Shown: positions 21,419-54,367 of the stretch, one piece after another
Layout of the letters: each line of letters begins with the position of its first letter
Position numbering within the stretch: position 1 is the stretch's first letter
Virus record (IMG/VR): IMGVR_UViG_3300046516_001816
Coordinates: 124,001 to 188,000 of that record
Length of the DNA stretch: 64,000 nt
Direction: 5' to 3' (one strand)
Notes under the pieces: model-generated
Seen by the model: only the letters and a program-made list of their open reading frames with translations
The model's database searches: none
Told to the model about the DNA's origin: nothing
Made by a program: the position numbers and the translations under genes

Positions 21419-22540
21419 GTGAAGCGTCTTATTGCAGTGCTGGCTGTGCTGACCAGCTTCTCGGCCCACGCGAATCTCGTGGTGAAGATCGGGCACTCGG
21501 TGCCGCTGACTGGGGAGTCGGCGAATATGGGTAAGGACGACCAGAACGGGGGCGTGCTGGCCATCGAGGAGTTGAACAAGCAGGGCATTACCGTCAAGGG
21601 GCAAGCCGTGACGTTCGTGCTCGACTCGGAAGACAACGCCGCGGATCCGCGTACCGGCACGATGGTCGCACAAAAGCTCGTGGACTCCGGTGTGGTGGCG
21701 GTGATCGACGGTCAGCTCTCGTCGGTGGCGATTCCGGCCGCGTCGATTTACAAAGCCGCTGGCATTCCGCAGATTGCCAATGCTGCGTCCAACCCCGAGC
21801 TTACCAAGCTGGGGATTCAGTCGGTGTTCCGCATTGTGGGGACCGACGATCAGCAAGGACCCGCGTTGGCGCAGTACGCGATCAAGACGCTTCACTACAA
21901 GACCTTCGCCGTGCAGGACGATCAGACGGCGTATGGTCACGGACTAGCGGAGGCATTTGCCAGTGAGGTTACGAAACAAGGTGGCCGGGTGGTGTATCGC
22001 GGGGGCAATAGCAACAAGCAAGTCGACTTCAAGGCTATGCTTACCACGATCAAAGGCAAGAACCCCGACGCAATTTTCTACGCCGGGGAAGAAGCCACCA
22101 CGGCCCCCCTCTTTAAGCAAGCGATCGCGCTTGGACTCCAGTCCCAGTTTCTTACCGGTGACTCGGGTTGTGTGGACGAACTTGCCAAGCTCACAGGCAC
22201 TGCGGCTACGGATCGCCTTACCTGCGCAGAACCTGACACTGCTTTTTCTCTCATACCCCGGGGCACGGAGTTTGAGAAAGCGTACCGTACCCGTTTCCGT
22301 CAGTCCATTGTGGACTATGCGCCCTACACGTACGACGCGATCATGCTGATTGCGGATGCCATCAAGCGCGCGGACTCGACGACGCCCAGCGATATCACGC
22401 AGGCCTTGAAAGCGGCGAACTACGAAGGCATCACCGCCACAATGCAGTTCGATCCGTTCGGGGATCTGAAGCATCCGGTCGTCAGTATTTCGAAGTTTGT
22501 GAACGGGGTGAAGACACCGTTTCAGATTGTGAAGCCGTAA
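21419..22540 (+). CDS. Branched-chain amino-acid ABC transporter substrate-binding protein (LivK/LivJ/BraC-like), orphan
   Basis: Sec signal MKRLIAVLAVLTSFSAHA; VKIGH..PLTG..A..GKD..NG..LAIEELN, D.AADP, TDDQQGP, DDQTAYG.GLA, DF..MLT.IK..NPD, YAPYTYDA, FD..GDLK. Confidence 0.92.
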   Translation: MKRLIAVLAVLTSFSAHANLVVKIGHSVPLTGESANMGKDDQNGGVLAIEELNKQGITVKGQAVTFVLDSEDNAADPRTGTMVAQKLVDSGVVAVIDGQLSSVAIPAASIYKAAGIPQIANAASNPELTKLGIQSVFRIVGTDDQQGPALAQYAIKTLHYKTFAVQDDQTAYGHGLAEAFASEVTKQGGRVVYRGGNSNKQVDFKAMLTTIKGKNPDAIFYAGEEATTAPLFKQAIALGLQSQFLTGDSGCVDELAKLTGTAATDRLTCAEPDTAFSLIPRGTEFEKAYRTRFRQSIVDYAPYTYDAIMLIADAIKRADSTTPSDITQALKAANYEGITATMQFDPFGDLKHPVVSISKFVNGVKTPFQIVKP

Positions 22541-22547
22541 AGGAATC

Positions 22548-23129
22548 ATGAACAAGAAAAAGACTATCCTGTTTTTCACGGGGATCGGTCTCATGACCTG
22601 TGTCGGGCTGACGCTGATCATCAGCTCGTGCAGTCACGACGAGGCCGATATTCAACCGGTGCAGCAACAACCGGTGCAAGCGCAGTCAGCCTCGCAGACA
22701 CCAGCGCCTCAGATCATCGAGCGTGAGCGGATCGTGGAGCGCCACCACAGCGGGATCAATAGTTTCTTGCTGTGGCACTATCTATTTAGTCAGTCGAGCC
22801 CGACCCACACGGTGGAGTATCGTCCTGCGCCGCTGTATCATCCGCAGGCTCCGTCGACGGTCGTGCAGCAGAACGTCACTAACGTGACGGTGAACAAAAC
22901 GGTGAATGTCAATGCCAATGCTCCCTCTGCTTCTGCTGATTCTTCTAGTGGCAGTCCTGCGCGCCCGGTGGTATCGGCCCCGGCAAAGTCGTGGTGGGCC
23001 ACCCCCACGCAAGTCATGAAGGCGTCGACGGCTTACCCGAAGGCGCAAAATACCAATACGGGGAGCTACGCGGCGAAAACCGCCAGCTACTCCGGCTATA
23101 AACAAACTGTGAAGATAGGGAGAAGGTAA
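22548..23129 (+). CDS. Putative lipoprotein with low-complexity Ser/Pro/Ala tail
   Basis: Basic N-terminus, hydrophobic stretch, lipobox-like ISSC. Confidence 0.6.
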   Translation: MNKKKTILFFTGIGLMTCVGLTLIISSCSHDEADIQPVQQQPVQAQSASQTPAPQIIERERIVERHHSGINSFLLWHYLFSQSSPTHTVEYRPAPLYHPQAPSTVVQQNVTNVTVNKTVNVNANAPSASADSSSGSPARPVVSAPAKSWWATPTQVMKASTAYPKAQNTNTGSYAAKTASYSGYKQTVKIGRR

Positions 23130-24061
23130 TGGACAAGGTCCTGTGTGTCTATCACAAAGACTGCATTGACGGTTACGCGGCGGCCTGGGTGGTCGGGCAC
23201 GCGTGTGGCTTTGAGAACGTGGAGTTCGTCGCGGCGAACTACGGCGATGCGCTGCCAGTGTTGGAAGGCCGGGAAGTCTATATCGTCGATTTCAGCTACG
23301 ATCCGGCTGAGCTCTCCACCGATGACTTGAAGCAGATGGCGAAAGCCAAGCGCCTGGTCATGCTCGATCACCACGAGACGGCCTACGCGAACTGGAAAGA
23401 TGTCCCGTTGCTGGATCACTGGACTTTCCGTTACGAACCTGCGATGTCTGGGGTTGGGGTGGCATGGCGCTGGTTCTTTGGCGGCAACAAAGCGATGCCC
23501 ATGCCCTTGCAGTTGATTCAGGATCGCGACCTGTGGCAGTTCCAGCTGGAAGGCAGTCGCGAGTTTCATGCGGTGGCAGTGTCCTATGGACTCCTGCGAG
23601 AAGCGCCGACCGAGCACGGCTGGCTGGGTCAGCTGATCGAGGACACACCGTTCTGGTTGAATGGGCCGCCTTCGGATATTATCATGATCCAGGGCAAGGC
23701 GATCATTCGGGATCAGAAGAATCTGATTCAGACACTCTTGCAGCGCGCGCATCTGGTGAGCTGCCGGGGCTATGAAGTGCCGCTGTGTCAGGTGCCTTAC
23801 GACATGCGCTCGGACGCGGGCTTCTGGTTAAGCCTCAAGTATCCGTTCTCGATTACCTACGACGATGTCTGGTCCGATGGCGTGCGCAAGTATTCGTTTC
23901 GCTCGAACAAGAAGACCGGTATCGACGTGATGAAAGTCACGCAACCCTGGGGCGGCGGTGGTCACAAGCACGCCTCGGGCTTTACGGTACCGATTGATCT
24001 GCCGTTCCCTTTTCTTGCAGTGCAGGGACGTCAGTTGAAGCTGGATTTTGAAGACAAGTAA
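23129..24061 (+). CDS. DHH/DHHA1 phosphoesterase (NrnB/nanoRNase-like)
   Basis: YHKDCIDG, IVDFS, LDHHET, DRDLW, GGGGHKHASGF. Confidence 0.9.
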   Translation: MDKVLCVYHKDCIDGYAAAWVVGHACGFENVEFVAANYGDALPVLEGREVYIVDFSYDPAELSTDDLKQMAKAKRLVMLDHHETAYANWKDVPLLDHWTFRYEPAMSGVGVAWRWFFGGNKAMPMPLQLIQDRDLWQFQLEGSREFHAVAVSYGLLREAPTEHGWLGQLIEDTPFWLNGPPSDIIMIQGKAIIRDQKNLIQTLLQRAHLVSCRGYEVPLCQVPYDMRSDAGFWLSLKYPFSITYDDVWSDGVRKYSFRSNKKTGIDVMKVTQPWGGGGHKHASGFTVPIDLPFPFLAVQGRQLKLDFEDK

Positions 24062-24626: not shown

Positions 24627-25886
24627 ATGTCGGACGGACTCGCCGCCCTCACCCAGAACTTACAAGCCGACATGCTGTCGGTGGCCGACTCAGCCTCTAA
24701 AGCGGAGACGAGTGCCAAGGACGCTGTGGCCAGCCAGGAGGCCGCGTACGCCGCTGCGCAAAGCGCCAGTACCAGTGCCGCCGGTGTCACCCAAGCGGCT
24801 GCTAGCAGCCTTACCAACGCGAACCAGGCCCAGTATTGGGCGGGCGTCGCTCAAGCCGTCAATGCGATCAAGGCCAGCTTCGATCCGGTGAGCCGCAGTG
24901 TGCTGATTGCCCTCTCTAATGCGAATCTCACAGCCCGATTTCCAGTGGGGCAAGCTGGCATTCTGGGCAATGTCGGACACGGTGCGGGACAGCATTATTT
25001 CGAAGTCACCTTTGTGTCGGGCAGCGCGAGCAGTAACTGTTCGATTGGGGTGGCGCCGAAAAAGCAAGACCTCAACAGTCAGATTGGCTACAACGACAAT
25101 AGCTCGGGCTCGATTGCAGCCTTCCAGAATTCCGGCAACATTTATAGCAGCGCCTCTAAGCTAGCGACCACGGATAGTTTCGGCACGGCCGGTGCGGTGG
25201 TGGGTGTCGCGGTGGATTCGGATAAGAACCTGGTCTGGATTCGCGTGAATAACGGACACTGGAATGGCAATCCGAGTGCGGATCCGGTCGAAGGGGTGGT
25301 GGGTTTGCCGATTCGCTTTACGGGCGCTGTGTACCCGGCGATGGCCACCGACGTGGTCTCGACGTATACCGCGAACTTCAACGGTCCGTTTGCCAACACC
25401 ATTCCTACGGGCTACAACGCCTGGGGGGCGGACGCGTTTCAGTATGTCGTACCGCTCGCGACCAAAGACACGCCGGGGGTGGCGTCCTTTGGTGAAGGCC
25501 TGGCGGTCGATGCGCAAGGTAATGTGACGGCCAGTGTCTATTACGATCTGGCCACCACGCAAGGCTGGGACACGATGACACTCGATCTCAGCACCCCGCA
25601 GCCGCTCTATCACCTGGTGCTGAATGCGACACAAGCGTCGTTGGCCTTTGCGAATCTGAATCTGCCCGCGGGTAAGGCGCTGCGCTTTACGCTCTACGTC
25701 GAACAGGGCACGGGGGCGAATACGATCACCCAGTGGGACAGCCGGATTCAGTGGTGCACGGGCTCGGGTCAGGCTCCGGTGCTGGCGTTTGCCAAGGGCG
25801 CACGCAATGTGTTTGAATTTGAAACCATCGACGGCGTAAGCTTCGCGGGCTACTACGTCGGTCAACTGAACGCGAGCGGTGCGTAA
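24627..25886 (+). CDS. Fibre protein: short Ala/Ser shaft + SPRY/B30.2-like domain + C-terminal fibre-tip domain
   Basis: GQHYFEV...CSIGVA...VVGVAVDSDKNLVWIRVNNG.W (SPRY); TLDLS...FTLYVEQGTGANTITQWDS.IQW (common phage tip domain). Confidence 0.75.
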   Translation: MSDGLAALTQNLQADMLSVADSASKAETSAKDAVASQEAAYAAAQSASTSAAGVTQAAASSLTNANQAQYWAGVAQAVNAIKASFDPVSRSVLIALSNANLTARFPVGQAGILGNVGHGAGQHYFEVTFVSGSASSNCSIGVAPKKQDLNSQIGYNDNSSGSIAAFQNSGNIYSSASKLATTDSFGTAGAVVGVAVDSDKNLVWIRVNNGHWNGNPSADPVEGVVGLPIRFTGAVYPAMATDVVSTYTANFNGPFANTIPTGYNAWGADAFQYVVPLATKDTPGVASFGEGLAVDAQGNVTASVYYDLATTQGWDTMTLDLSTPQPLYHLVLNATQASLAFANLNLPAGKALRFTLYVEQGTGANTITQWDSRIQWCTGSGQAPVLAFAKGARNVFEFETIDGVSFAGYYVGQLNASGA

Positions 25887-25895
25887 GGAGTCAGT

Positions 25896-28640
25896 ATGTT
25901 ATCGAGTCTTCGCGTAGGACATAGTAGCGAACAACAAAACGCGCTCTCGATCATCCACGGGTTTAATAACTTTCTCGAACGCAAGACCGGGGACGTGGAT
26001 GACAATGGCGACAACGTGGTAGGGGCATTTGTCATCAATAACGAAGGCATGCTCTGCAACAACTTGCACTTCGAAGGCGGTCCGCAAGACTATACGCCCA
26101 CGCAGTGCTCGACCACCGAAGGGCAGTCGCTGTTGATCCTGGGTTACTACTATCTGTGGAAGGGCACGGGCAATCCGGTGTGGCTGCAAAAAGCCGAGCA
26201 GTACTTTGACTGTTATGTGAGGTACTTCTATGGCACCGCGCCCGTTCCCAACCCGCCCGCGATCTATCGCGCCAACTGGATTATGAACGGCAAGAATCCG
26301 TTTATGGTCTATGGTCCGCCCAATCCGCTCAGCGCGCAAAGCCCCGGCTTCTATGGCGAGCCGATTCAGTTCACCAATGGCGTGGGGGTGATTCCGGCCG
26401 GTGGGACGACCTTTGGCGACAAGCTGGTGAAGGTGTATCAGATCTTTACTGGGAAGTTTGCCTACGACTCCGTGCGTGCCGGTCCGGCCCATGGGGGCAC
26501 GTCCTATACGTTCCAGTCGTTTATGGCGACCAACGGAGCGTGGGATAAGAAGTACAACAGCACGACGATGTCAGCGAACACGGCGGTTGGGACCATCATC
26601 CTGGATGACACGTCCTTCACCGGTACGCTGTCGGTGAGTTACGTCATCGAGTCCGCCAATATCATCGGGCGCAACCAGCCGTTTGACGTCTGGCCGACCT
26701 GGCGTACCCTCCAACCCGACGAGTTGGGTAACGCCATTGATGCCGAGCAGTGGTTCACCGAAGCCGCGTTGTTGCTGTATAAGGCAACGGGCAATCCGCT
26801 GTATAACCAGATCTATCAGTGCGGGCTGCTGACCTGTCTGGATGCGACGGTGGTGGATGACGTGACGTATTACTTCCAGAAAGAAGCGACGTCGGTGGAT
26901 CCGTGTGACTACGGTATCTCCTACTGGTGGAACTATACGCCGACCAATAGCATCGCAACCATCAGTCGGAATGCGGACGGCTATATCGTTGCCACCAAGA
27001 CAGCGGAGACGGGGGATCACCTCGGGACCTTTGCGCTGGAACAGATTGCGGTGTTCAACCAGATTGGCCCGAACACGTCCATCAACAATACGTTCTCGAT
27101 TGATAGCCCGACAGCCCGGATTGACTTCTACACGTATATCCAGTCGGCCGTCGATGCGCCCACTGGGGTGAAGTATCGCTACTCGTTGCCGCAAGGGAAC
27201 TGGAGCCAGATGCAGACGGTGAACGTACCCTTTAACAAGATGATTGCCACGACTAAAGCGGATGGGTCGGAGCTCATTATGTTGGATGGGGCGAACTTTG
27301 CGACCTGGGGCACGGCGACCGCTGTGAGTACCTACGAGACGTTTACGCTTAATGGTCAGGTCTACTCGGACTATGTCTGTACGGCCACGTGTCCGGATAA
27401 TAACTCGGGACTCGCCGCTGGGTTCTGGTTGTTGCAGACCACGACCCAGTCGATTGCCCCGCTCACCTACAAGTCCATCTCCGGCACGATGTATGTGGTG
27501 TTGAAAGACGCGCTGGGCGTGAACTACTGGTATGCGTTGCCGCACGCCGATGACTGGACTACGATCAATCTGACCTGGGATATGTTTACGCTGGTGCCCT
27601 ATCAGAGCGGTACGCCTTCGCCGACGCCGACCCCGCAAGCGGCGATGACGCAGATTGAGTTCGAGACCAATAACAGTGCGGCGACCATCCAGACGTATTG
27701 TTGGGGCGCTGTTCCCACGGTCTATCATCCGAATGGCGAGTGGTCCACGCAGTGGTTCTTGCATGCAAGCGACAGTTCAGCGTTCACTTGGTTGGTCGGG
27801 GATGTGGTGATTCAGAATCAGGCGAATCAACCGTTTAAGTATACGCCGGGCGTGGTGCCGTTTTCCAATCAGTATTCGCCGTCCTTGCGTCGTAATGAGT
27901 TCTGGCGCGGCACGCCCTATTCGGGGTATCAGTATCCGGTGAACTGGCTGTATGCGACGCTGCCCGACTATTACGAGAACGTGATTCAGTTCTACTGGGA
28001 CTGTCAGCAGGCGTATCGCAACGAGATCGGGGTGTTGGGTCCGTTCATGCCGGCTTACGTCTGGCCACGGTATGACAACCTAGGGGAAGGACCGATTGAA
28101 AGCTTTGCGTTTGGCTCCGATCAACCCCAACCCTGGGCGGGCTATGAGCCACGCGGTTTCTTCTCCGCGTGTCATTTGTGGGCCGAGCTGGTGCGCCAGC
28201 ATAAGCCCGTCAATCCGAAGCTCGTCCAAGTCTGTCAGAACTACGCCGGGTATCTGTTGCAATTCCAGAAGACACACAACGGGTTGACGCCGTCGGTGTT
28301 TCCCCGGACTGCACCGCCGTATAACGACGGTTGGGATGCCGACCCCGAGCAAAGCAATCCGGACCACGTCGGACATATGACAGGGCTCTGGTTGGCAGGC
28401 TGTGTGGAGATGTTGAATGCGGGGGACAAGAGCGGCATTCCGCAGAAGGTCATCAAGTACTTGCTGCAAGAGCTCGAGAATACCTACGTGATTCGCAGTG
28501 ACGCCGAGTCGGACATGAATGGCTCGTTTTCACCTTGGGCAGGCGGCCGGATGTTCTACGGCTTCTGGGCAGGGGAGATCTTCCGGGGGTTGGGACTGTA
28601 CCTCGAATGGCTGAACAAAGGCAACAGTATTAACGCTTAA
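25896..28640 (+). CDS. Virion-associated glycoside hydrolase, GH8-like (alpha/alpha)6 barrel with inserted beta domains
   Basis: STTEGQSLLILGY (cf. GH8 TSEGQSY) and GNAIDAEQWFTEAALLL (cf. N.ASDGD.W.A..LL). Confidence 0.6.
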   Translation: MLSSLRVGHSSEQQNALSIIHGFNNFLERKTGDVDDNGDNVVGAFVINNEGMLCNNLHFEGGPQDYTPTQCSTTEGQSLLILGYYYLWKGTGNPVWLQKAEQYFDCYVRYFYGTAPVPNPPAIYRANWIMNGKNPFMVYGPPNPLSAQSPGFYGEPIQFTNGVGVIPAGGTTFGDKLVKVYQIFTGKFAYDSVRAGPAHGGTSYTFQSFMATNGAWDKKYNSTTMSANTAVGTIILDDTSFTGTLSVSYVIESANIIGRNQPFDVWPTWRTLQPDELGNAIDAEQWFTEAALLLYKATGNPLYNQIYQCGLLTCLDATVVDDVTYYFQKEATSVDPCDYGISYWWNYTPTNSIATISRNADGYIVATKTAETGDHLGTFALEQIAVFNQIGPNTSINNTFSIDSPTARIDFYTYIQSAVDAPTGVKYRYSLPQGNWSQMQTVNVPFNKMIATTKADGSELIMLDGANFATWGTATAVSTYETFTLNGQVYSDYVCTATCPDNNSGLAAGFWLLQTTTQSIAPLTYKSISGTMYVVLKDALGVNYWYALPHADDWTTINLTWDMFTLVPYQSGTPSPTPTPQAAMTQIEFETNNSAATIQTYCWGAVPTVYHPNGEWSTQWFLHASDSSAFTWLVGDVVIQNQANQPFKYTPGVVPFSNQYSPSLRRNEFWRGTPYSGYQYPVNWLYATLPDYYENVIQFYWDCQQAYRNEIGVLGPFMPAYVWPRYDNLGEGPIESFAFGSDQPQPWAGYEPRGFFSACHLWAELVRQHKPVNPKLVQVCQNYAGYLLQFQKTHNGLTPSVFPRTAPPYNDGWDADPEQSNPDHVGHMTGLWLAGCVEMLNAGDKSGIPQKVIKYLLQELENTYVIRSDAESDMNGSFSPWAGGRMFYGFWAGEIFRGLGLYLEWLNKGNSINA

Positions 28641-28697: not shown

Positions 28698-28701
28698 TAT
28701 G
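28698..28701 (+). promoter_or_regulatory. Putative late promoter TATG
   Basis: ATTTTATG, 31 nt before ATG 28732. Confidence 0.45.
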
Positions 28702-28731
28702 CATGTCTCAACCACCATAAAAGGGCTCACT

Positions 28732-30348
28732 ATGTCAGACGGTACTACTCCTGGCTCGGATGGGATCAGCGCAGCCGCCACCGCGTTGGCTCAAGAAATG
28801 TCGAATTCCTTGTCGGAGTTCATCGATGGCGTGGTAGCCAACGTCAATCAAGACACGATCGCCAATGCGCAAGCCAGTGCGGCCGCGGCCGCTGCGTCCG
28901 CGACGGCTGCTGCCTCATCCGCCTCTCAGGCTTCTCAAGCGTCGACGACGTCGGCGGCTAACTCCGGTTCCTCGGGTCAAAGCGCGACCTGGGCATCCCA
29001 ATCCGCGACGGCTGCGGCGGCTGCCGCGGCTGAATCCCTGGCTGCCCAACAAGCGGCCAATCAAAGCTACGCCAACACGCAAGCGGCACTCGCTGCCTTT
29101 CAAGCGACGGCCACCGCGTTGACGGGTTTCATGACCACGTACAAGACGTACTTCCTGGGGGCGGGCGCGGCTGACCCCACGCAAGACGGCAATGGCAACT
29201 CGCTGCGCGAAGGGGCCATGTACGAGAACACAACGAGCCACAAAATCCGGGTCTACTCGGGCACCCAGTGGAACGATATCGACTACACGATCCAGGCTCA
29301 ACTCGCTGCCGCTACGGCGTCCGCTACGGCGGCTGCGAGCTCCGCCACTGCCGCCGCGGGTTCCGCGACGGCCGCCGGTGCTTCGGCGACGTTGTCCCAG
29401 AACTGGGCCTCGCAAGCCTCGGGCGTAGTGAACGGTACGAGCTCGCTCTCGGCTAAGCAATACGCCGGTAATGCGGCGACCTCGGCGACCAACGCGGCAT
29501 CGTCCGCGACCGCAGCGGCTGCTTCCGCGACGGCCGCGGCAGGCTCGGCCACGCAAGCGCAAACGTCGGCTGCCACCGCGACCTCCCAAGCCACCTCGGC
29601 GTCGGGTTCGGCTACCGCTGCTTCGGGTTCCGCTACAGCGGCATCCACGTCGGCGGGTAACGCATCCACGTCGGCCACGGCGGCTAGTACTTCGGCAACC
29701 AACGCAGCCAATAGTGCCACGGCCGCCGCGGGTTCGGCGACGGCGGCTGCGACGTCGGCTACAAATGCGTCGAACAGTGCAGCGAGCATCGGCGCGTTCG
29801 GTGTGCTCTCAGGCATCGTGTCAGTGACCAACAACAAGAACCTGACGAGTGCGGACTACGGGAAGATGTACGAGATCCCGTCGGGCTCGGCAGGCGGCTA
29901 CTCGATTGCCGCGCCTGCGGTGGTCGCAGGCGACACCGGTAAATGCTTCGGGATCTGCAACCGCTCCACGGGTGCGGTCACAGTCACGACGGGGGCGAAG
30001 TTCTTCAGCTCCTACGGCTCGAACGTAGCAACGGTGACGATCCCGCCGAATTCGACGGTGATCTTCCAGCAAGACGGTACGAACTTCAACGGCATTGCAG
30101 GCTCGGGGGCCATCGGTAGCACCCTGGTGCCGACCAACGCAGCCCAACCGGGTCAATGGGAGGCGCTCGCGCCGACGGGTCCGGCAGGGGGTGCGACGTT
30201 TGTGTTGCCGGGGGACGCTACGCAACAATGGGCCTACTTCGTGGCCAATGGTTCGCAGCAAGCCGCAGGCGTGGGTGCGGGTGGTTCGGGCGTGTTGGGT
30301 CCGTTCACGTCCAGCAATCCGGTGGGGTTCTGCTGGCGCATCGGTTAA
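28732..30348 (+). CDS. Tail-fibre protein with Stf-like Ala/Ser/Thr coiled-coil shaft, one knob domain and a C-terminal tip
   Basis: SATAAAG heptads; FLGAGAADPTQD...GAMYENT knob; ATG 28732 after AAGGG. Confidence 0.85.
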   Translation: MSDGTTPGSDGISAAATALAQEMSNSLSEFIDGVVANVNQDTIANAQASAAAAAASATAAASSASQASQASTTSAANSGSSGQSATWASQSATAAAAAAAESLAAQQAANQSYANTQAALAAFQATATALTGFMTTYKTYFLGAGAADPTQDGNGNSLREGAMYENTTSHKIRVYSGTQWNDIDYTIQAQLAAATASATAAASSATAAAGSATAAGASATLSQNWASQASGVVNGTSSLSAKQYAGNAATSATNAASSATAAAASATAAAGSATQAQTSAATATSQATSASGSATAASGSATAASTSAGNASTSATAASTSATNAANSATAAAGSATAAATSATNASNSAASIGAFGVLSGIVSVTNNKNLTSADYGKMYEIPSGSAGGYSIAAPAVVAGDTGKCFGICNRSTGAVTVTTGAKFFSSYGSNVATVTIPPNSTVIFQQDGTNFNGIAGSGAIGSTLVPTNAAQPGQWEALAPTGPAGGATFVLPGDATQQWAYFVANGSQQAAGVGAGGSGVLGPFTSSNPVGFCWRIG

Positions 30349-30366
30349 AAACGCATGCTTTTCGTG

Positions 30367-30393
30367 GGGAGCCTTCGGGCTCCCTTTTATTTT
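30367..30393 (+). terminator. Intrinsic terminator (cUUCGg)
   Basis: GGGAGCC-TTCG-GGCTCCC-TTTTATTTT. Confidence 0.8.
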
Positions 30394-30411
30394 GTCTTCA
30401 GGGGTTAAGAC

Positions 30412-31441: not shown

Positions 31442-32542
31442 ATGGCTTTGTTGTTTTGTGACGGGTTTGATATTTACACCAAAGTCTCGGAGCTCACGGG
31501 TAAGGGCTGGCAGGGCGCGGCGGGCAGCCAGACACTCAATGCGAGTATTGCCCTGTCTGCTTCAGGCAGTCCCTACGGTGGACAATGCATTATCATCGGT
31601 CCCACCGCGAACGGGGTATCGATGTATAAACCCGGGGTGTTTACCTATGCCAATGGCTATACCTTGAACTGTGCGTATATGTACAAGCACACGGGTGGAT
31701 TCCCGAGTCAAAATGAGGGCTCGACGAACGTGGGGGGTTTGCTGCTGCTCGGCTACGATCAGCCCATCGCTGGGCAGTCCGATAGTCGCACGCTGCTCAG
31801 TGTGAATACCACAGGCAAGTTGACCTTTATGCCTTTCGGCGGCAATACGCTGAATGCGACCACGGGCAATATCAATCTTTGCGATGGCGTGTATCACTGG
31901 ATTGAAATGCAGGTGGTACTCACTACTGCGGCGACAGGTTCGGTTAAAGTGTATGTAGATGGGGTATTGGATTTAAACCTCACGAATCTTATCACCGTCA
32001 GCTCCGGCACACCGCAGGGTGAAGTAGGCTTTGGTAGCACGTCCAATAACGGAGCGTTTAGCGTCACGGATTATTACGATGATGTGGTGATGTGGGACAA
32101 TACCGGCACAACGTTCAATACCTTTCCCATTGGTCCGCAACGCATCTATACAGCCACACCCAATGCCGCTGGTGCGCTGTCGCAGTTTACCCCGAGCGCA
32201 GGGGCGAACTACGCGGTGGCTGCGCAGGCGTATTCGGGCGCGGCGTATTTGACAGCCACGGCTGCTGGGCAATCCGATCTGTATGCGACGACCGGACTCG
32301 GGGGCGCGACACCCTCGCAGATTAACGCGGTGGCGGTGAACACCTATGCCAATAATCCGGCAGCGGGATTTCGTAAGCTTCAGAATCTACTGCAATCGAA
32401 GGGCGTCACGGTCTCCGGTCCTTCTTATCAGCTCACTGCCAGCAGTGTGGGCTATCAGACGATTTTTCACACCGATAGCAGCGGCGCGGCGTGGACCACC
32501 ACCACGGTGGCGGGCATGCAGGTGGGCGTGGGAGCAGTGTAA
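31442..32542 (+). CDS. Lectin-like (LamG/ConA-like + jelly-roll) virion head protein (cassette A)
   Basis: N-terminal LFCDGFD; HWIEMQV...VKVYVDG...YYDDVVMWD; C-terminal GAAWT motif; paralog of 54380-62366. Confidence 0.7.
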   Translation: MALLFCDGFDIYTKVSELTGKGWQGAAGSQTLNASIALSASGSPYGGQCIIIGPTANGVSMYKPGVFTYANGYTLNCAYMYKHTGGFPSQNEGSTNVGGLLLLGYDQPIAGQSDSRTLLSVNTTGKLTFMPFGGNTLNATTGNINLCDGVYHWIEMQVVLTTAATGSVKVYVDGVLDLNLTNLITVSSGTPQGEVGFGSTSNNGAFSVTDYYDDVVMWDNTGTTFNTFPIGPQRIYTATPNAAGALSQFTPSAGANYAVAAQAYSGAAYLTATAAGQSDLYATTGLGGATPSQINAVAVNTYANNPAAGFRKLQNLLQSKGVTVSGPSYQLTASSVGYQTIFHTDSSGAAWTTTTVAGMQVGVGAV

Positions 32543-38985: not shown

Positions 38986-41900
38986 ATGAGCGACTTGTCA
39001 AAGAAGTTAGAGGACGAACTGAGCTTGCTGCTGGACTCGATTTCGGGTCTGACAGGCGCAATTGAAACGGTCAGTACCGGCACGACCGGCGAGACGCTTC
39101 AGCAACTCGTGGACACTGCGACCACGCAAGCCAATGACTCCGCCACCAGTGCTGCGCAAGCGGCGACGATTCAACTTGAAATCCAGAACAGTATTCTGGC
39201 CGCGCAAACGGCTGACCTGAATGCCGCGACGGGTGCAGCGAATGCAGCGATCGCCGCTAGTAACTCGTTGACCTATTCGCAAAACGCGGGTAACAGTGCG
39301 ACAGCCGCTGCTGGTAGTGCCACAGCGGCTGCCACGAGTGCCACCTCGGCGGCGTCGGCAGCGACGTCGGCCAACAACGCCGCGAACAATGCCATTGCGT
39401 TGGCTTCGTCGTGGGCGAGTGTCTGGTTGGGTCAACACACGGCCGATCCGACGCTGGATAACAGCGGTGGGGCCTTGATCAGTGGTGCGATGTACATGAA
39501 CACCACGACCACGCCTCCGCACCTGCGGATCTATTTGAATGGTGCGTGGCAAGATCAGGATGCTGATGCGATTGCTGCAACGCAGGCAGCCCAAGCTTCC
39601 GCAACGCAAGCCTCGATGAGTGCATCGACTGCTAGCACGCAAGCCACGAACGCAGCTGCCTCAGCCACGGCTGCGGCCAATAGCGCAACTGCTGCGGCTA
39701 CCAGCGAGACCAATGCGGCGGCTTCCGCAACGTCCGCTGCCAGCAGTGCGAGTAACATTGCAGGTCAGATTGCAGCAGCCACCACCCAAGCTGGTAACGC
39801 CAGCGGAAGTGCCACGAACGCAGCCACAAGCGCCAGTGCGGCTGCTGCCAGTGCGACGGCAGCGGCCGGTTCGGCCAGCGATGCAGCCACAAGCGCTACC
39901 GGTGCAGGCACGCAGGCCAGTGCAGCAGCGTCCTCAGCAACGGCTTCGAGTAATTCAGCGAATGCTGCGAATACATCGGCTTCGAGCGCAGCCGGGTCGG
40001 CTACTGATGCTGCAACATCTGCCACGAACGCCAGCAATAGCGCAACCGCCGCGGCTTCGTCGGCAAGTGATGCTTCGTCCAGTGCGGGAATTGCCACTAC
40101 GAAGGCAGGGGTAGCGACGACGCAAGCGGGCAACGCTTCGACTTCTGCTAGCAATGCTGCGACGTCTGCTTCTGCGGCAGCGGGTTCAGCCACGGCCGCA
40201 GGGACATCCGCTACCAACGCAGCTAATTCCGCGAGCGCAGCGGCCGCGAGTGCTTCGGATGCGGATACTCAAGCTGCGACGGCAGCGACCCAAGCAACCA
40301 ATGCCGGTACGTCCGCCACCGCGGCCGCAGGCAGCGCAACCGCTGCGGCTACGTCAGCGACGAATGCAGGTAACTCGGCGACAGCAGCGGCTGCTTCTCA
40401 GAGCGCTGCCCACACGAGTGAACTGAATGCAGCGACGTCGGCCACCACGGCAGGAACGCAAGCGACCAATGCTTCGGGAAGTGCTACCGCAGCAGCAGCG
40501 TCTGCTACGGCTGCTGCTACCAGCGAAACGAATGCGGGTAATAGCGCGAGCGCAGCAGCAGGTTCGGCGACAGCGGCCGCAGGGTCCGCCAGTGCAGCAA
40601 GTACGTCAGCTGGCAATGCGGCGGCGTCTGCCACCACAGCAACGAACGCAGCGAATGCAGCCACGGCGTTGTATCACTCATGGGGTCAGATGTGGTTGGG
40701 TGAATTCACGACCAACCCGACGCAGGACAATCAAGGCGGTGCACTGGTTAGTGGTGCGCAGTATTTGAATACGTCCACCACGCCTCCTCAGGTGATGATC
40801 TACCTGAATGGCGCATGGGGTCCGTTGGATGCGGATGCGCAAGCGGCTACGCAAGCGGCACAGACCTCGGCTTCACAAGCTGCTGCGAGTGCGACGACTG
40901 CAAGTAATCAGGCGAGCACCGCGACGACGCAAGCGGGTAATGCGAGCACATCTGCGACGAATGCAGCCAACTCCGCCACCGCCGCAGCGGGCAGTGCGTC
41001 AGCTGCGTCGACGTCGGCGGGCAATGCAAGTAGTAGTGCTACAGCCGCCGCGGGTAGTGCGACTGCGGCCAGCGGTTCGGCCACGACGGCTTCAACCCAA
41101 GCTACAAACGCCGGTAACTCGGCTACTGCTGCTGCGGGTTCTGCAACCGCCGCGAGTACGTCCGCCACCAATGCTAGCACCAGTGCGACTACCGCACAGA
41201 ACTGGGCCTCCCAGGGTAGTGGGACGGTGGATGGAACGAGTTATTCAGCGAAGTACTACGCTAACCAGGCGGGTATCAGCGCAACGAATGCAGCGAGCTC
41301 GGCCTCGGCCGCAGCCACCTCTGAAACTAATGCAGCGGCTTCGGCCACAACTGCCTCCAATCAAGCAACCACGGCAACCACTCAAGCCGGCAATGCCAGT
41401 AGTTCGGCCTCTGCTGCGAGTACGAGTGCGACCAATGCGGCAAGTTCCGCTACGGCCGCGTCCGGGTCTGCAACAACTGCGAGTACCCAAGCCACGAATG
41501 CGTCTAACAGCGCAACGCTGGCTCAGAATTGGGCTTCTCAACCGTCCGGTGTGGTCGGCGGCACGAGTAGTTATTCTGCGGTGTACTATGCCAATCAAGC
41601 CAGCGCTTCAGCCACGGCTGCATCGACCAGTGCGTCGAATGCTTCGGGCTCTGCTAGTGCGGCAGCGTCCTCAGCGACCGCGGCCAGCAATAGCGCAAGC
41701 GCGGCAGCAACCAACCAAACCAACTCAGCCAATAGCGCCACGAGTGCGTCAGGGAGTGCCGGCTCGGCTGCGACCAGTGCAACGAACGCGAGTAACTCCG
41801 CCACCGCTGCCTCGACGTCTGCGACGAACGCCAGTACCTCCGCGACCAATGCGGCGAACTCCGCCACGGCCGCCGCGACCTCGGCGACCAATGCTTCAAA

Positions 41901-44900
41901 CAGTGCCACGGCAGCCCAGACTGCGGCCACCACGGCGCAGAATGTCCAGATCGGTTTGAATACGATCACGACACTCAGCAAGACCGGTGGTACGTATTCA
42001 CTCACGACAGCCGAATACAACAACGGCATCATCATTGTCAATGGGACGCTCACCAGTCCCCTGATTCTGGTGGTCCCGGCGACCTCGCATCCGTTCATTC
42101 TGGACAATGCCACGACGGGTGCCTACTCGCTGACGGTGAAGATGACGGGTGGTTCGGCGCAAGTCACGGTCGCTCAGGGCAACTCGAACCAGTTGTTCTG
42201 TGATGGTAGCACGGGCGTGTATTCTGTCTCGTCCGTGTCCGGTCTGCAATTCAACGCAGTCAAGGCCATCAGCAGCGCAACCAATGCGCTGACGAACCTG
42301 TACCAGGGTGCGTACACGCCGATGAGCAACGGCGGTGGCACGACCTATGCTGTCACCTTGCCGCAAGGCTCGACGATGGGTGTAGGCGGGGCGGTGTTCC
42401 TCGATGCGATCTCGGGCAAATGGAGTGTGGCTCCGTACAGTGGCGACACGGCGGACTTCGGTGCTTCGTTTGCGATGGGTCCGGTCGACAAAGCCATGTT
42501 TACGTGGAATGGCTCGAGCTGGCGTACGACGTTGTATTCCAACCAGGCCTCCCCGGTATTCAGTCAGTCGCTGACGGTACCGGTTGCGTATATCACCGGT
42601 CGTGCGGTGATAGGTGGGGTGACGGACGACGGCACGACAGCAGTGCAAGCTACGTCGGGACGCTTTACGTCGAGCCTGACGGTCCCGACGATGACGGCTG
42701 GGGACAACAGCCTGAACGCTGCGAACACGGCCTATGTGGTCACGGCGATCAACAACCTGATTGGCGGAGCACCGTCGGCCCTGAACACGCTGAAGGAACT
42801 GGCGGACGCAATCAATGATGACGCGAGCTATGCCGCGAGTATCACAACGCAGCTGGGCACGAAAGCCTCCCTGTCGGGCGCAAACTTCACGGGTGCGGTG
42901 ACGGCTACGGCACTGACCTCGACCACAGGGGTGGTGAATGCTTACGGCTACAGCGGCAGCAATAGCAAGGGCGTGATCTATTTCACCCAGGACGGCACGC
43001 GTTACCTGTACTACGATGGTTCGCAATACAATCTGCCGGGGGCTTCGCTCCTGATCAACGGCAGTGCGGCATGGACGGCGGCGACGTTTAATCCGGCGAA
43101 CTATGCAGCGCTGGCAGGTGCAGCGGCCTTTGGCGGAGCAGTCACCGGCACAGCGGCGACCTATGCGCTCAGAGCCACCAACGGAGCAGGCACAGGCCAG
43201 ACCACCATCGGCCTGAATGCCGTGGGTGCCGCAACCGATGCGAAGAACTGGGAAGTGATCATGGGCTCGGACCAGTCCTTCGGGATTCGGACGATCAATG
43301 ATGCTTACTCGGCGTCTAACTACGCGTTGCAGGTGTATCGCTCAGGCTATGCGATTACCACCATGCGCATCATGGGCAGTGGCGGTCGGACGTTGATCGG
43401 CACGGGTACACAGGTGTCGGATGACGGCGCCACCAACGTACAGGTGGGTGCAGGTCTGCGGGTGCAGCGTACGAGCTCCAGCGGGCAGGCGATCAGTTTG
43501 ATGCCGGCCCCGTTGAATACGGTCTCGGGCAGCAATCTGTCGGATAACTATATCACGTCGTACTCGGCCACGGGTAATGCCAAGTCGCTGGTGTTGAATG
43601 CGACCACGGATACGGCGGACACTGCATCGACAGCGGGTAACGTGTCGCTGATGCTTCAGGTCATGAGCACCACGGCGCTGGCGGTAACAAGCACGCGCAA
43701 CGTGATCATTGGATCGAGCACGGACGACGGCAGTGGCAATATCTTGCAGGTGCGGGGTGGACTGGGCATCATTGGGAACGGTAAGGGCATCACGTTCCCG
43801 GACGGTACGGTGCAGAACACGGCTTATTGCGTGACGGCCCCGACGGTGATGTCGTATACGCCAGCTAACGGGGTAAGTACGTTTAGCTGTCAGCCGTACG
43901 GTGTTGGTTTGGTGCAGGTGTTCGAAAACGGTGCGCTCATTACCGAGTACACCGCTACCACGGGCAACAGCATTACTCTTAACACCGCCGCCAATGGTCG
44001 CACGCAGTACACGGTGGTGAGTGGGGTGTTGTTCCAGGCCTCCAACGTGTTGCAGCCAGCTGTGTCAGTCGTCAATCCGACGGTGGGTACGACCACGCTG
44101 ACCTTGCCGGTGAGCACCCCAGTGGGCTATCTCTGGATCTTCCAGGGTGGGGCATGGCTGGTGCCGGGTCAGGACTTTACGTTCAATGGTGGTACGTCGG
44201 TGACCTTGACCGCTGCCACGACTCAGTCGTCGGATTCGTTCACGCTGGTAATGTTGCAGCCGGTGTCGTTTGCCAATACGGCGACGCAGTCCAACGTGCA
44301 AGCCGCACAGCTCACCTTTGCGGCGGACACAGGGGTCGCGAACGCTTATGCGGTCGCCTACATTCCGGCGGTGAGTACGCCGACCAACGGCATGCAGTTG
44401 TCGTTCTTTGCGAATGTGGCTAACACGGGCGCCTCGACACTGACCTGTAATGGCGGGACGGCTTATCCGATCTACGGCAATGGTCATGCAGCCTTGACAG
44501 GTGGCGAAATTGTTGCCAACGGTTTCGTGGAAGTGACCTTCAGTTCGGTGCTGGGTGGCTGGATCTTGATGGAGTGTACAGGGGGCTCGCAGCAGATCGC
44601 GAAGAACCTCAACTTCGCCGGCACGGGTAATCGCATTACGGGGGATTTGAGTAATGCAACGGTCGCGAACCGCCTGCTGGTCCAGTCCTCGACGGTAAAC
44701 GGCAACAGTGTGTTGGGGATTGTGCCTAATGGGACCTCGACGACTTCCGCCATAAACGTCTACGGCGGCTCGGATCTGGTGAACTACTCGCTGGGTCAGA
44801 TGGCAAATTACGGTACCGACCTTCGTTTTCAAGCCGTACAGGCTGGTACAGGTAGCTACCTACCGCTGACGTTTTACACGAGCGGCGCGGAACGCATGCG

Positions 44901-54200: not shown

Positions 54201-54367
54201 TGGGCACGCTCACGTTCACGCAAACGACAGGCAATAGCGGCACGGGTGTGTTTAGTTCAGTCTCGAGTACGACGACGGTGTTTAATCCGGGTGACACGAT
54301 TTCGTTGTTGCCGGTGAGCACCAATCTCGCCTCGATGGCTGTGACGTTTAAGGGTAGCTACAGTTAA
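48296..54367 (+). CDS. Very long fibre shaft (2023 aa) with 4 knob domains, 12 WAS..YSA.YYA knuckles and a C-terminal adaptor domain (cassette B)
   Basis: Ala/Ser/Thr heptads throughout; C-terminal VGTLTFTQ...VFNPGDTISL matches the end of 30412. Confidence 0.9.
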   Translation: MTGNVDHLTHLKGEVEQLVDTVDGLGVAFNLATGGDIAVYAQQALANAGQAQTASAAASQSATTATAAATQTAQDVINANAAATQAAASAGNAAQSASTAVSAQLSASSSASAASNSAIAAANSASTMAASVTAAGNSAAAAHTSETNAATSASAAQSSAAQVTALYNAWGQVFLGEFPSDPTLDNQGNALIDGAMYLNTTEVPPAIRIYTAGKWQDMDEQGVLASQAAQTSAQQAATSSSAAQTFAGTAATNAAAASTSANAAATSATTASDLAGQAATSATNASDSEIAAASSATEADAAAALAQDWASKSDGTVGGTEFFSAAHYAQEADAANTAVQSSISNAAALGGAAATSATQAASSATAAATSASQASGSATAAGVSAGNAANSAAAAQASQSAAATSETNAATSATHAATSETNAAASATSASAADTDAKAQATSATTAAQLAEDWATKTSATVDGVEYSAKYYANQAVAADTDAQAKAATAATSATTATTQATNATSSATLAQQWATSATLVASTDYSAKYYANAAGSSATAAANSASSIAATATAVAANAALAAAWASQESGTVNGTTYYSALYYALQAANADTDAQTQATNAATSATAAASSATNAATSASSLQSALASFSALFLGPHSTPPTVDNQGNPLITGAQYMDSSQSPPVLNEWTGSAWVAVSNDASGNAQLAATQAQAAATSASGSASAASTSESNASTSATNAANSATAAASSASASAGSATAAQTAASAAQAADTDATTQATNAGASATSAAGSASAAGTSAGQATDAAALAQAWASQASGNVNGTAFASALQYAQQASSSATSASTAVTQSQANATLAQSWASQTSGKVNSSNYYSAYYYATQAATSATAAGTSATTASTAATSATASQTAAATSATNAAGSATTAQTAATTATNQAAAASASASAAAASDTDATTQASNAAASATTASNAATTASAAATTATTQATAAAQSATQAAASATAAASSATSAASSATAAAASATTASTQAGNASTSATNAANSAASILGQTGTNLAQVQAIQAQLNAALASFGSVWLGQQTSDPTVDLNHQPIANGAMYQNTSTTPPVIRIYEGGVWQDWDLQGEQAMANATLAASQAAQSATASATSAQTSATAANTALTAMNAAQAAQTAAQSADSDATTQATAAAGSATAADGSAQQAEYFMNQAIAWATSDSANINFSNRGSAYYYASVAYNYYVAIQNLNSSAGTSATNAANSASAAAASLSSINTQLSQSAASATAAAASAADAASSAGNASASASASANSAATSATQSSNASTAAANANNSANQAATSATASAQSATDASTSASQAAAYLNDVTNHTGDASQYSALAQSWASQGSGTVDGTSYSAYYYANQAGVSATNAGNSAAGASSSATAAAGSETNSAASAALAQAWASQGSGVVNGTSSYSAFYYAQAAATSATSAANAVTTGSQYVTLAASWASQATGNVDGSQYKSAFQYATLAAASQQTASTAATNAAGSATAAASSATAAAGSASSAATSLASLQAAYASFTSTWLGPYSTPPTQTPTGGVLTIGAQYEDTSQTPPVVMTWDGSVWNPPSAADASASANVTLAAAQAQSAAGTAATSASNASSSETNAAASASAAAASASAADASNTATTANAALAQAWASQTSGKVNGTQSYSAYYYMLQAQSALNSVQASQTDVDAKQTQADASASLAMAWASQSTGVVNNTQYYSAYYYAQQALSANTSAQSALTTIQAAVAQAQTAATQATNLVSGPSGSANYYSTQAANSATTASTAATNAQTSASAAATSAANAAAAAQQVLTNSNAASTSATNASNSATAAAGSATAAQGSATAANTSKTNAATSATAAAGSASAAAGSATQAANSATSATSSATAASSSATAAAASAAKALVNARISCSVTGNPNVFQEVKYPFAGDTCTFDTNFGPSAAICTFMEGTSATVNVLAYNAAHPTGVVVGTLTFTQTTGNSGTGVFSSVSSTTTVFNPGDTISLLPVSTNLASMAVTFKGSYS

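What the first reader, a model, noticed from the sequence alone, without database searches (positions are those of the whole stretch)
25896..28640. GH8-like glycosidase embedded in the fibre operon, with catalytic motifs split by large inserts
Seen: STTEGQSLLILGY (Glu codon 26118-26120) and GNAIDAEQWFTEAALLL (Asp codon 26739-26741), a helical C-terminus, and long aromatic beta-rich inserts between them. Known: GH8 enzymes such as BcsZ cellulase and chitosanases have TSEGQSY (catalytic acid Glu) and N.ASDGD.W.A motifs. Inference: a virion-borne glucanase/depolymerase for cellulose-like or other beta-glycan matrix, co-transcribed with the SPRY fibre. Most phage depolymerases are beta-helices, so an (alpha/alpha)6 one is less usual.
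Basis: partly seen in the sequence, partly recalled or inferred. Interest (0 to 1): 0.62.

Follow-up and report, generated by a model that had tools for sequence, protein, structure and literature searches.

The report
Phage tail GH8-like glycosidase barrel
This jumbo-phage gene encodes a tail protein built on a cellulase-like (alpha/alpha)6 barrel with sugar-binding-type inserts.

Summary
E75 and D282, plus E284, are invariant in 65 homologues, some only 23% identical. A confident AlphaFold2 model (pLDDT 88) has an (alpha/alpha)6 barrel made of three separate segments, split by two beta inserts. The barrel's best solved matches are GH126 (Z 32), GH105, GH8 (Z 24-26), GH76 and GH48 (Z 22). The larger insert consists of CBM-like jelly rolls.

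By sequence it belongs to no CAZy-type family: Pfam and NCBIfam give no hit, and a profile comparison with GH8 reaches only P about 0.015. The GH8a base position and the GH126 arginine are not conserved.

It is a member of phrog_2871 "tail protein", found in 540 phage records and many prophages. A Loughboroughvirus homologue (phage S144) is a virion protein by mass spectrometry.

In P2-like prophages the family lies between baseplate gpI and fibre gpH. In Serratia it is fused to gpI. Elsewhere a small fibre-tip protein usually precedes it.

Most likely it is a baseplate-borne glycosidase. Its substrate is unknown. Its whole-length conservation across hosts argues against a host-specific, cellulose-type depolymerase.

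The parts
24627..25886 (+). Upstream 419-aa fibre protein. It has a SPRY domain (residues 122-242) and a C-terminal fibre-tip domain (about residues 296-412, nt about 25512-25862).
   Evidence: Pfam SPRY, E 2e-8. PHROG tail-fibre families match residues 296-412. The C-terminal domain is 32% identical to BP63 gp28 (E 1e-13) and also matches the rV5 222-aa protein (E 7e-8); both lie directly upstream of the homologue. The same domain lies directly upstream in 20 of 27 unfused bacterial loci. The Atlas names it PF26209 Phage_phiTE_241_C, which is a lead only.
25885..25890 (+). AAGGAG ribosome-binding site, overlapping the upstream stop codon TAA at 25884-25886.
   Evidence: Read directly from the sequence.
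25896..28640 (+). 914-aa tail protein (P0001), a member of phrog_2871.
   Evidence: ORF. phrog_2871, E 4e-219. Model pLDDT 88.2, pTM 0.83.
25896..26249 (+). Barrel segment 1 (residues 1-118): helices 2-29, 74-91 and 94-111. It carries TTEGQS with the invariant E75 (codon 26118-26120).
26250..26702 (+). Insert 1 (residues 119-269), all-beta. It is as conserved as the barrel. Its fold was not searched on its own.
   Evidence: DSSP strands 129-264. Mean conservation 0.54 against 0.55 for the barrel.
26703..26861 (+). Barrel segment 2 (residues 270-322): helices 281-298 and 301-317. It carries N279-A-x-D282-A-E284-x-W286 (D282 codon 26739-26741, E284 codon 26745-26747).
26862..27896 (+). Insert 2 (residues 323-667): CBM-like beta-sandwich (jelly-roll) domains, probably two with one nested in the other. 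This is the least conserved part.
   Evidence: Separate model pLDDT 91.3. VIA-align Z 10-13 to CIA30, CBM4/11/22/27/29 and the hyaluronan-binding module, with about 135-160 residues aligned. The Foldseek top hit is the tandem CBM22-1/CBM22-2. Conservation 0.44.
27897..28640 (+). Barrel segment 3 (residues 668-914, plus stop): helices 690-711, 750-767, 774-793, 826-841, 848-863 and 890-907. Conserved residues include W723, R725, D727, Y750, R753, H827 and E894.
   Evidence: An Atlas GH48-flavoured cluster matches residues 673-896 with TM 0.81.
28699..30348 (+). Downstream 549-aa tail-fibre gene, the last gene before the terminator.
   Evidence: PHROG tail-fibre families.
30366..30395 (+). Intrinsic terminator-like hairpin (8-bp stem, 6 GC pairs, TTCG loop) followed by a T-run. 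It is the likely 3' end of the three-gene unit.

Best explanation
P0001 is a virion tail, probably baseplate-periphery, protein of a 285-kb jumbo phage. Its core is an (alpha/alpha)6 barrel distantly related to the inverting glycoside-hydrolase clan GH-M and its look-alike GH126.

The barrel is assembled from three sequence segments. Two beta-rich inserts sit in the long loops that precede inner helices. The larger insert consists of CBM-like jelly rolls. The inserts therefore lie on the face of the barrel where the conserved polar residues lie.

E75, in T-T-E-G-Q-S, is the likely general acid. D282 and E284, in N-A-x-D-A-E-x-W, correspond to the GH8 ASDGD pair that holds the -1 sugar. The catalytic base is not identified; D727 and E894 are candidates.

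The protein is made together with a short fibre protein that ends in a conserved tip domain, and it probably rides on the baseplate rim. There it would bind and cut a surface polysaccharide during adsorption.

Shown: the ORF, the motifs and their invariance, the fold, family membership, gene order, the gpI fusion in relatives, and virion presence of a homologue. Inferred: catalytic activity, residue roles, geometry of the cleft, position in this phage's virion, and any substrate.
For: Fold: the whole model has pLDDT 88.2. VIA-align over 48,161 chains gives 3ren_B (GH126) Z 32.0, rmsd 2.8, 327 of 332 residues aligned; GH105 27.4; GH8 4q2b 26.2, 6g00 25.1 and 1h12 24.1; PssZ 24.5; GH76 25.9; GH48 22.1. 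An Atlas GH8 cluster has TM 0.78 over residues 13-904.

Motifs: E75, Q77, D282 and E284 are invariant in 65 homologues. A barrel-only profile against 19 GH8 sequences gives one colinear alignment of 279 columns. In it TTEGQS pairs with SEGQ, and N-A-I-D-A-E-Q-W pairs with N-A-S-D-G-D-L-W. Its score of 26.3 exceeds the reversed control (19.2) and all 15 block shuffles (highest 25.5).

One conserved face: 17 residues at 95% conservation or more lie within -3 to +4 of the starts of helices 74, 281, 750, 826 and 890. Only 3 lie at the starts of their hairpin-partner helices.

Virion and baseplate: phrog_2871 'tail', E 4e-219. S144 ORF17 was detected by virion MS and called a hydrolase by HHpred. 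In rV5 the homologue follows the baseplate genes and precedes a fibre gene. The Pseudomonas prophage order is V-W-J-I-partner-homologue-H-sheath-tube. Serratia prophages fuse Tail_P2_I (E 6e-52) to it.

The insert is CBM-like.
Against: No enzymatic activity is known for any member. Sequence similarity to GH8 is marginal: no Pfam hit even at E 10 on the separate segments, and hhalign P 0.015. The GH8a base position (Y-D-A-x-R) aligns to a variable column. No coordinates were available, so the claim of a shared cleft rests on topology. The same fold also occurs in epimerases, unsaturated glucuronyl hydrolases and terpene cyclases, with Z 17-27. The own genome has no Pfam-detectable Baseplate_J or Tail_P2_I, so the baseplate position in this phage is extrapolated. 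The complex test with the partner gave no verdict.
Confidence: 0.55

Rival explanations
1. It is a structural baseplate or fibre-docking protein whose barrel only binds glycan, like a lectin or receptor-binding protein, or merely scaffolds the fibres. It has no catalysis. On this view the invariant residues serve binding or folding.
For: The whole length, inserts included, is conserved like a structural part. In P2-like prophages it sits at, or is fused to, the gpI wedge position next to the fibre gene. No catalytic base could be assigned. Databases annotate it as tail or tail-fibre protein.
Against: The exact acid motif T-[ST]-E-G-Q and the D-x-[DE] pair of GH8 are invariant over 65 sequences. 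That conservation is hard to explain by binding alone. HHpred on the S144 homologue also suggested a hydrolase.
Confidence: 0.22
2. This is the first reader's reading: a host-specific depolymerase for cellulose-like or other beta-glycan matrix, carried on a fibre.
For: GH8-like motifs and fold. CBM-like inserts. The gene lies in a fibre gene block.
Against: Depolymerase and receptor-binding domains normally vary and are swapped between phages. Here the barrel and insert 1 are conserved across phages and prophages of many genera with different capsules and O-antigens. Nothing tested points to cellulose. Solved structural neighbours act on mannan, xylan, alpha-glucan, Listeria EPS and unsaturated uronides alike.
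Confidence: 0.13
3. It is an enzyme for a glycan shared by many Gram-negative hosts, such as LPS core, ECA-like polymers, PNAG or peptidoglycan. Such a target would explain the broad conservation.
For: The family is conserved across Proteobacteria-infecting phages. The BASEL study argues that the conserved glycan-hydrolysing fibre parts of Vequintavirinae probably target conserved glycans (PMC8594841).
Against: There is no direct evidence. A peripheral baseplate protein would not reach peptidoglycan. ECA is confined to Enterobacterales, while the family also occurs in Burkholderia, Pseudomonas and Vibrio phages. The deacetylase fibre discussed in that paper is a different protein.
Confidence: 0.1

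Closest known systems
phrog_2871 'tail protein' family: Salmonella phage BP63 gp29, S144 ORF17, the rV5 865-aa tail protein, the phAPEC8/phi92-group and Seoulvirus homologues, and Yersinia phiR8-01 'Tail protein I'
   Same: Full-length homology at 24-33% identity over 95-99% of the protein, with the same invariant residues. The location is in tail or fibre gene blocks. A small upstream gene carries the same C-terminal domain.
   Different: This copy is from a 285-kb jumbo phage. Its closest relatives (61-74%) are on Burkholderia and Paraburkholderia contigs. Its upstream partner carries an extra SPRY domain. It has no gpI domain of its own.
GH126 (CPF_2247, PDB 3REN; PssZ, PDB 6R2M)
   Same: Best solved structural match: Z 32.0, rmsd 2.8, 327 of 332 residues aligned. 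It shares the Glu and Asp machinery common to GH8, GH48 and GH126 (PMC7479077).
   Different: There is no sequence hit. The GH126-specific Arg three residues after the Asp is absent: column 285 has Q/E/V/L/T and never R in 65 sequences. GH126 enzymes are single-domain proteins, whereas this one has two large inserts.
GH8 (BcsZ-type endoglucanases, xylanases, chitosanases; Pfam PF01270)
   Same: (alpha/alpha)6 fold with Z 24-26. Colinear motif matches to T-S-E-G-Q and N-A-S-D-G-D-x-W.
   Different: No PF01270 hit. hhalign reaches only P 0.015. The Asp of the Y-D-A-x-R base motif is not conserved. It carries about 500 residues of inserts and works in a virion.
GH48 cellobiohydrolases (clan GH-M)
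   Same: Barrel similarity: 5bv9 Z 22.1; Cel48F is the best-TM Foldseek hit; an Atlas GH48-flavoured cluster has TM 0.81 over residues 673-896.
   Different: No sequence similarity was detected. The inserts differ in place and kind.
Beta-helix tailspike depolymerases (P22, CBA120, K1F type)
   Same: A virion-borne enzyme that would cut surface glycan during adsorption.
   Different: An entirely different fold. This protein has no beta-helix and no obvious trimerising stalk, and it is conserved rather than swapped between hosts.

Membership tests
phrog_2871 (phage tail protein) | Significant full-length match to the family profile | tested here: met
   E 4.1e-219; residues 10-910 match profile positions 117-1043.
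phrog_2871 (phage tail protein) | Presence in the virion | not testable with these tools
   Known only for the homologue S144 ORF17, by ESI-MS/MS (PMC7432712).
GH8 (CAZy; Pfam PF01270) | (alpha/alpha)6 barrel | tested here: met
   Z 26.2 (4q2b), 25.1 (6g00), 24.1 (1h12), 23.4 (5gy3, 6vc5). Atlas GH8 cluster TM 0.78.
GH8 (CAZy; Pfam PF01270) | Significant sequence similarity to the family model | tested here: not met
   No Pfam hit at E up to 1 on the whole protein or up to 10 on the segments. Barrel-only hhalign against 19 GH8 sequences gives E 0.015, barely above shuffles.
GH8 (CAZy; Pfam PF01270) | General-acid Glu in the [ST]-E-G-Q motif at a helix start | tested here: met
   T73-T74-E75-G76-Q77; E75 and Q77 are invariant. 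It aligns to the GH8 SEGQ and sits at the start of helix 74-91. Its role as the acid is inferred from the family.
GH8 (CAZy; Pfam PF01270) | A-[ST]-D-[AG]-D signature | tested here: met
   N279-A-I-D282-A-E284-Q-W286 aligns to N-A-S-D-G-D-L-W. The second acid is Glu rather than Asp, in all 65 sequences.
GH8 (CAZy; Pfam PF01270) | Catalytic base Asp in the Y-D-A-x-R motif (GH8a type) | tested here: not met
   The aligned stretch is G-F-F-S-A-C-H-L, family consensus R-A-F-x-x-A-x-R. The Asp column is variable. This part of the alignment has low confidence.
GH126 | Closest three-dimensional similarity to CPF_2247 | tested here: met
   3ren_B Z 32.0, rmsd 2.8, 327 of 332 residues aligned; 4.6 Z units above the next family.
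GH126 | Family-specific Arg139, three residues after the Asp (CSR-3) | tested here: not met
   Column 285 has Q 27, E 26, V 5, L 4, T 3 and no Arg. The definition comes from PMC7479077. The test assumes that D282 equals Asp136.
GH126 | Tyr194 and Tyr307 equivalents | not testable with these tools
   No residue-level structural alignment or GH126 sequence was available.
Active glycoside hydrolase of any family | Two carboxylates 6-11 A apart in one cleft, and measurable hydrolysis | not testable with these tools
Only the topology argument is available.
P2 gpI-type baseplate wedge protein | Tail_P2_I domain (PF09684) | tested here: not met
   Absent from P0001 and from the whole 285-kb genome. 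It is fused to the homologue in nine prophage loci, eight labelled Serratia and one Pseudomonas lundensis.

The most novel reading that the evidence does not exclude
The family is a new, unclassified glycoside-hydrolase family, a distant sister of GH8, GH48 and GH126. It would form a standard enzymatic module of the myovirus baseplate rim, from P2-like prophages to jumbo phages. Its catalytic barrel is flanked by built-in CBM-like domains, and it would cut a glycan common to many Gram-negative envelopes rather than a strain-specific capsule.
Probability: 0.3. Interest if true: 0.6.

Novelty: new member of a known kind. Interest (0 to 1): 0.42.

Why it matters
The family sits in about 1% of sequenced phages, including therapy-relevant rV5-, phi92-, phAPEC8- and Rosemountvirus-type phages, and in many prophages. 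It has no Pfam, NCBIfam or CAZy home and no assay. If it is active, it would be a conserved baseplate enzyme rather than a swappable depolymerase. That would bear on how these broad-host-range myoviruses cross surface glycans, and it would add a new GH family. For this window alone it is a sound functional annotation.

Tried and rejected
- Pfam on the whole protein and on five segments: nothing significant. The only hit was a sub-threshold GH76 match, E 0.007, on residues 48-112.
- NCBIfam: nothing.
- PDB by sequence, single protein and profile: only a GH76 helix-repeat match at E 0.17.
- Megablast of 12 kb against phages: no match.
- The search for related loci with the single protein: nothing. 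The alignment query then found 39 loci.
- Foldseek on the whole model is dominated by the beta inserts (Cry, Vip3 and CBM hits with TM about 0.1). Only Cel48F was informative. VIA-align was needed.
- hhalign with the full-length profile breaks at the inserts, so a barrel-only profile was used.
- Idea that this is the Vequintavirinae 'deacetylase' fibre homologous to N4 gp64 (PMC8594841): rejected. N4 gp64 shows no similarity to A1 or to the rV5 homologue.
- Idea that the upstream partner is a gpI homologue: rejected.
- Complex prediction of P0001 residues 7-914 with partner residues 328-419: no verdict. It is not evidence either way.
- Baseplate_J and Tail_P2_I were not found in the own genome.
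- The papers on phiTE, RBPseg and SD286 gp38 held nothing on this protein.
- Model coordinates are not exposed, so no distance between E75 and D282 could be computed.
Full report
**Observation.** The window is bases 124001-188000 of a 284,983-base virus record that CheckV rates as complete, so it comes from a jumbo phage.
- The ORF at 25896-28640 (+) is open for 914 aa.
- An AAGGAG site at 25885-25890 overlaps the stop codon of the upstream gene.
- STTEGQSLLILGY is residues 72-84, with the E75 codon at 26118-26120. GNAIDAEQWFTEAALLL is residues 278-294, with the D282 codon at 26739-26741.
- The word search returned 84 relatives. The closest (61-74% identity) are hypothetical proteins on Burkholderia and Paraburkholderia contigs. 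The rest are phage and prophage proteins at 23-44%.
- In a 65-sequence alignment (A1), only 29 of 914 columns are invariant. E75, Q77, D282 and E284 are among them. The motifs are therefore real, conserved features.

**Fold.**
- AlphaFold2 on A1 gave a confident model: pLDDT 88.2, pTM 0.83.
- It has eleven long helices: 2-29, 74-91, 94-111, 281-298, 301-317, 690-711, 750-767, 774-793, 826-841, 848-863 and 890-907. Two all-beta stretches (about 119-269 and 323-667) separate them.
- Foldseek on the whole model was swamped by the beta parts. Only Cel48F (GH48) gave a meaningful TM-score.
- VIA-align against 48,161 representative chains settled the fold:

| Match | Family | Z |
|---|---|---|
| 3ren_B (CPF_2247) | GH126 | 32.0 (rmsd 2.8, 327 of 332 residues aligned) |
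| 4xuv | GH105 | 27.4 |
| 4q2b / 6g00 / 1h12 | GH8 | 26.2 / 25.1 / 24.1 |
| YteR | GH105 | 26.0 |
| 6shm | GH76 | 25.9 |
| PssZ | GH126 | 24.5 |
| 5bv9 | GH48 | 22.1 |

- The Atlas search agreed: a GH8 cluster at TM 0.78 over residues 13-904, and a GH48-flavoured cluster at TM 0.81 over residues 673-896.

**Inserts.**
- Insert 2 was modelled alone (A2, pLDDT 91.3).
- It matches CBM-type beta-sandwiches: CIA30, CBM4/11/22/27/29 and a hyaluronan-binding module, with Z 10-13 and about 135-160 residues aligned. One set of matches spans residues 4-322 of the insert and another spans 135-287.
- Foldseek's top hit is a tandem CBM22 pair.
- This fits two jelly rolls, one nested in the other.
- Insert 1 is all-beta and as conserved as the barrel, but it was not searched alone.

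**Relation to GH families.**
- Sequence tools see no family: Pfam and NCBIfam give nothing, and PDB by profile gives only a GH76 helix repeat at E 0.17.
- I collected 19 proteobacterial GH8 sequences through PF01270 genome searches and compared profiles.
- With the inserts removed, hhalign gives one colinear alignment of 279 columns, E 0.015. TTEGQS falls on the GH8 SEGQ, and N-A-I-D-A-E-Q-W falls on N-A-S-D-G-D-L-W.
- The score of 26.3 beats the reversed control (19.2) and all 15 block shuffles (highest 25.5), but only narrowly.
- From my own knowledge of GH8, not tested here: the SEGQ Glu is the proton donor, and the first Asp of ASDGD holds the -1 sugar.
- The GH8a base Asp (Y-D-A-x-R) aligns to a variable column.
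- The Arg that defines GH126, three residues after the Asp (PMC7479077), is absent in all 65 sequences.
- The protein is thus GH8/GH126-like in fold and acid-side motifs but does not meet the sequence criteria of either family.

**One conserved face (inference).**
- No coordinates were exposed, so I used topology.
- Seventeen residues at 95% conservation or more lie within -3 to +4 of the starts of helices 74, 281, 750, 826 and 890. They are T73, T74, E75, Q77, N279, D282, E284, W747, G749, Y750, R753, H827, M828, G889, F890, G893 and E894.
- Only three lie at the starts of the hairpin-partner helices.
- In (alpha/alpha)6 enzymes the N-termini of the inner helices and the long loops before them form the active site. 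The two inserts occupy exactly such loops.
- This fits a single conserved cleft flanked by the CBM-like domains. It does not prove it.

**What the family is in phages.**
- P0001 matches phrog_2871 'tail protein' at E 4e-219.
- tblastn finds homologues in 540 of 50,697 phage records, 515 of them near full length. They include Rosemountvirus, phAPEC8 and rV5 relatives, and Vibrio and Erwinia phages. Isolated listed records include a 368-kb Escherichia jumbo phage and about 240-kb Salmonella phages. Two records already say 'glycosyl hydrolase' or 'glycosidase superfamily'.
- In phage S144 the homologue ORF17 is a virion protein by mass spectrometry, and HHpred suggested a hydrolase (PMC7432712).
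- BFVD shows the same fold in fibre proteins of Klebsiella, Alteromonas and Pseudomonas phages.
- An (alpha/alpha)6 tail enzyme is therefore under-annotated rather than rare.

**Place in the tail.**
- In rV5 the homologue follows the tape-measure and baseplate genes and precedes a 1272-aa fibre gene.
- Scanning bacterial genomes with A1 gave 39 prophage loci.
- In a Pseudomonas prophage the gene order is spike V, W (gp25), J, I (Tail_P2_I), a 175-aa protein, the 950-aa homologue, fibre H, sheath, tube.
- In nine prophage loci (eight labelled Serratia, one Pseudomonas lundensis) the homologue is fused to an N-terminal Tail_P2_I domain (E 6e-52). The product is 1097 aa and lies between J and H.
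- This places the family at the baseplate rim, next to the fibre attachment site.
- The own genome has a single copy and no Pfam-detectable J or I. The position in this phage is therefore extrapolated.

**Conserved partner.**
- The gene just upstream in the window (24627-25886) has a SPRY domain and a C-terminal domain of about 90-120 aa.
- That C-terminal domain is homologous to BP63 gp28 (E 1e-13) and to the rV5 222-aa protein (E 7e-8). Both are encoded directly upstream of the homologue.
- The same domain is encoded directly upstream in 20 of the 27 unfused bacterial loci (E 1e-5 to 2e-18).
- The Atlas names the domain Phage_phiTE_241_C, a fibre-tip domain (a lead only).
- A two-gene module this stable suggests that the two proteins work together. 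The complex prediction gave no verdict.

**Transcription.** The two genes are 9 nt apart with no terminator between them. The first strong terminator is at 30366-30385, after the next fibre gene. This is consistent with co-transcription but does not prove it.

**Function.**
- Best reading (0.55): a baseplate-borne glycosidase with E75 as the acid and built-in CBM-like domains, cutting a surface glycan during adsorption.
- The substrate is open. Barrel and insert 1 are conserved across hosts with unrelated capsules and O-antigens, and insert 2 is more variable. This speaks against a strain-specific depolymerase. It fits either a shared glycan or a conserved catalytic core with variable binding surfaces.
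- The BASEL authors made a similar point for the conserved glycan-hydrolysing fibre parts of Vequintavirinae (PMC8594841). The deacetylase fibre they link to N4 gp64 is a different protein.

**Verdict.**
- This is a new member of a known but uncharacterised phage tail-protein family.
- Interest is moderate. The value lies in the fold-and-motif assignment, the gpI fusion and the conserved partner, which together make the family's function directly testable.

Noticed in passing
window 21419-22540 (+): A 373-aa periplasmic solute-binding protein (Peripla_BP_6, E 4e-49; ANF_receptor, E 3e-30) is encoded in a phage genome just upstream of the fibre block. This is unusual cargo.
   Followed up: no
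window 23129-24061 (+): A DHH-family phosphoesterase (phrog_4771, E 1.5e-59) lies between the binding-protein gene and the fibre genes.
   Followed up: no
window 37725-62991 (+): A very large fibre island. It holds two giant fibre genes (38986-45579, 2197 aa; 48296-54367, 2023 aa), several shorter fibre genes, and three tandem paralogues of 753-761 aa (55510-57795, 57810-60071, 60081-62366; phrog_30887). The C-terminal part of those paralogues (phrog_2448) also occurs in 31442-32542.
   Followed up: partly
L026 9464-12757 and eight other prophage loci (L015, L017, L019-L022, L024, L027; eight labelled Serratia, L027 Pseudomonas lundensis): The family is fused to an N-terminal P2 gpI baseplate domain (1097 aa), in the canonical V-W-J-I-H order. 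In these loci the small upstream partner gene is missing.
   Followed up: yes
L006 8801-14410 (Pseudomonas lini prophage): Here gpI, a 175-aa protein with the conserved tip domain, the 950-aa homologue and the gpH-type fibre are separate consecutive genes. This shows the unfused arrangement inside a P2-like tail cluster.
   Followed up: yes
window 24627-25886, residues about 296-412: By Atlas features and shape, the C-terminal domain of the SPRY fibre resembles PF26209 (Phage_phiTE_241_C). That domain also ends collagen-repeat, Mtd_N and Tail_spike_N fibre proteins. The local Pfam scan did not report it.
   Followed up: partly
whole genome G000: No Pfam Baseplate_J or Tail_P2_I match was found anywhere in the 285-kb genome, so its baseplate wedge proteins are too divergent for these models.
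   Followed up: partly
phage collection records MG065645, MG065661, MG065676 and others: Records labelled 'Campylobacter phage' carry homologues whose scores and matched ranges are almost the same as those of coliphages of the rV5 and phAPEC8 groups. The host labels may be unreliable.
   Followed up: no
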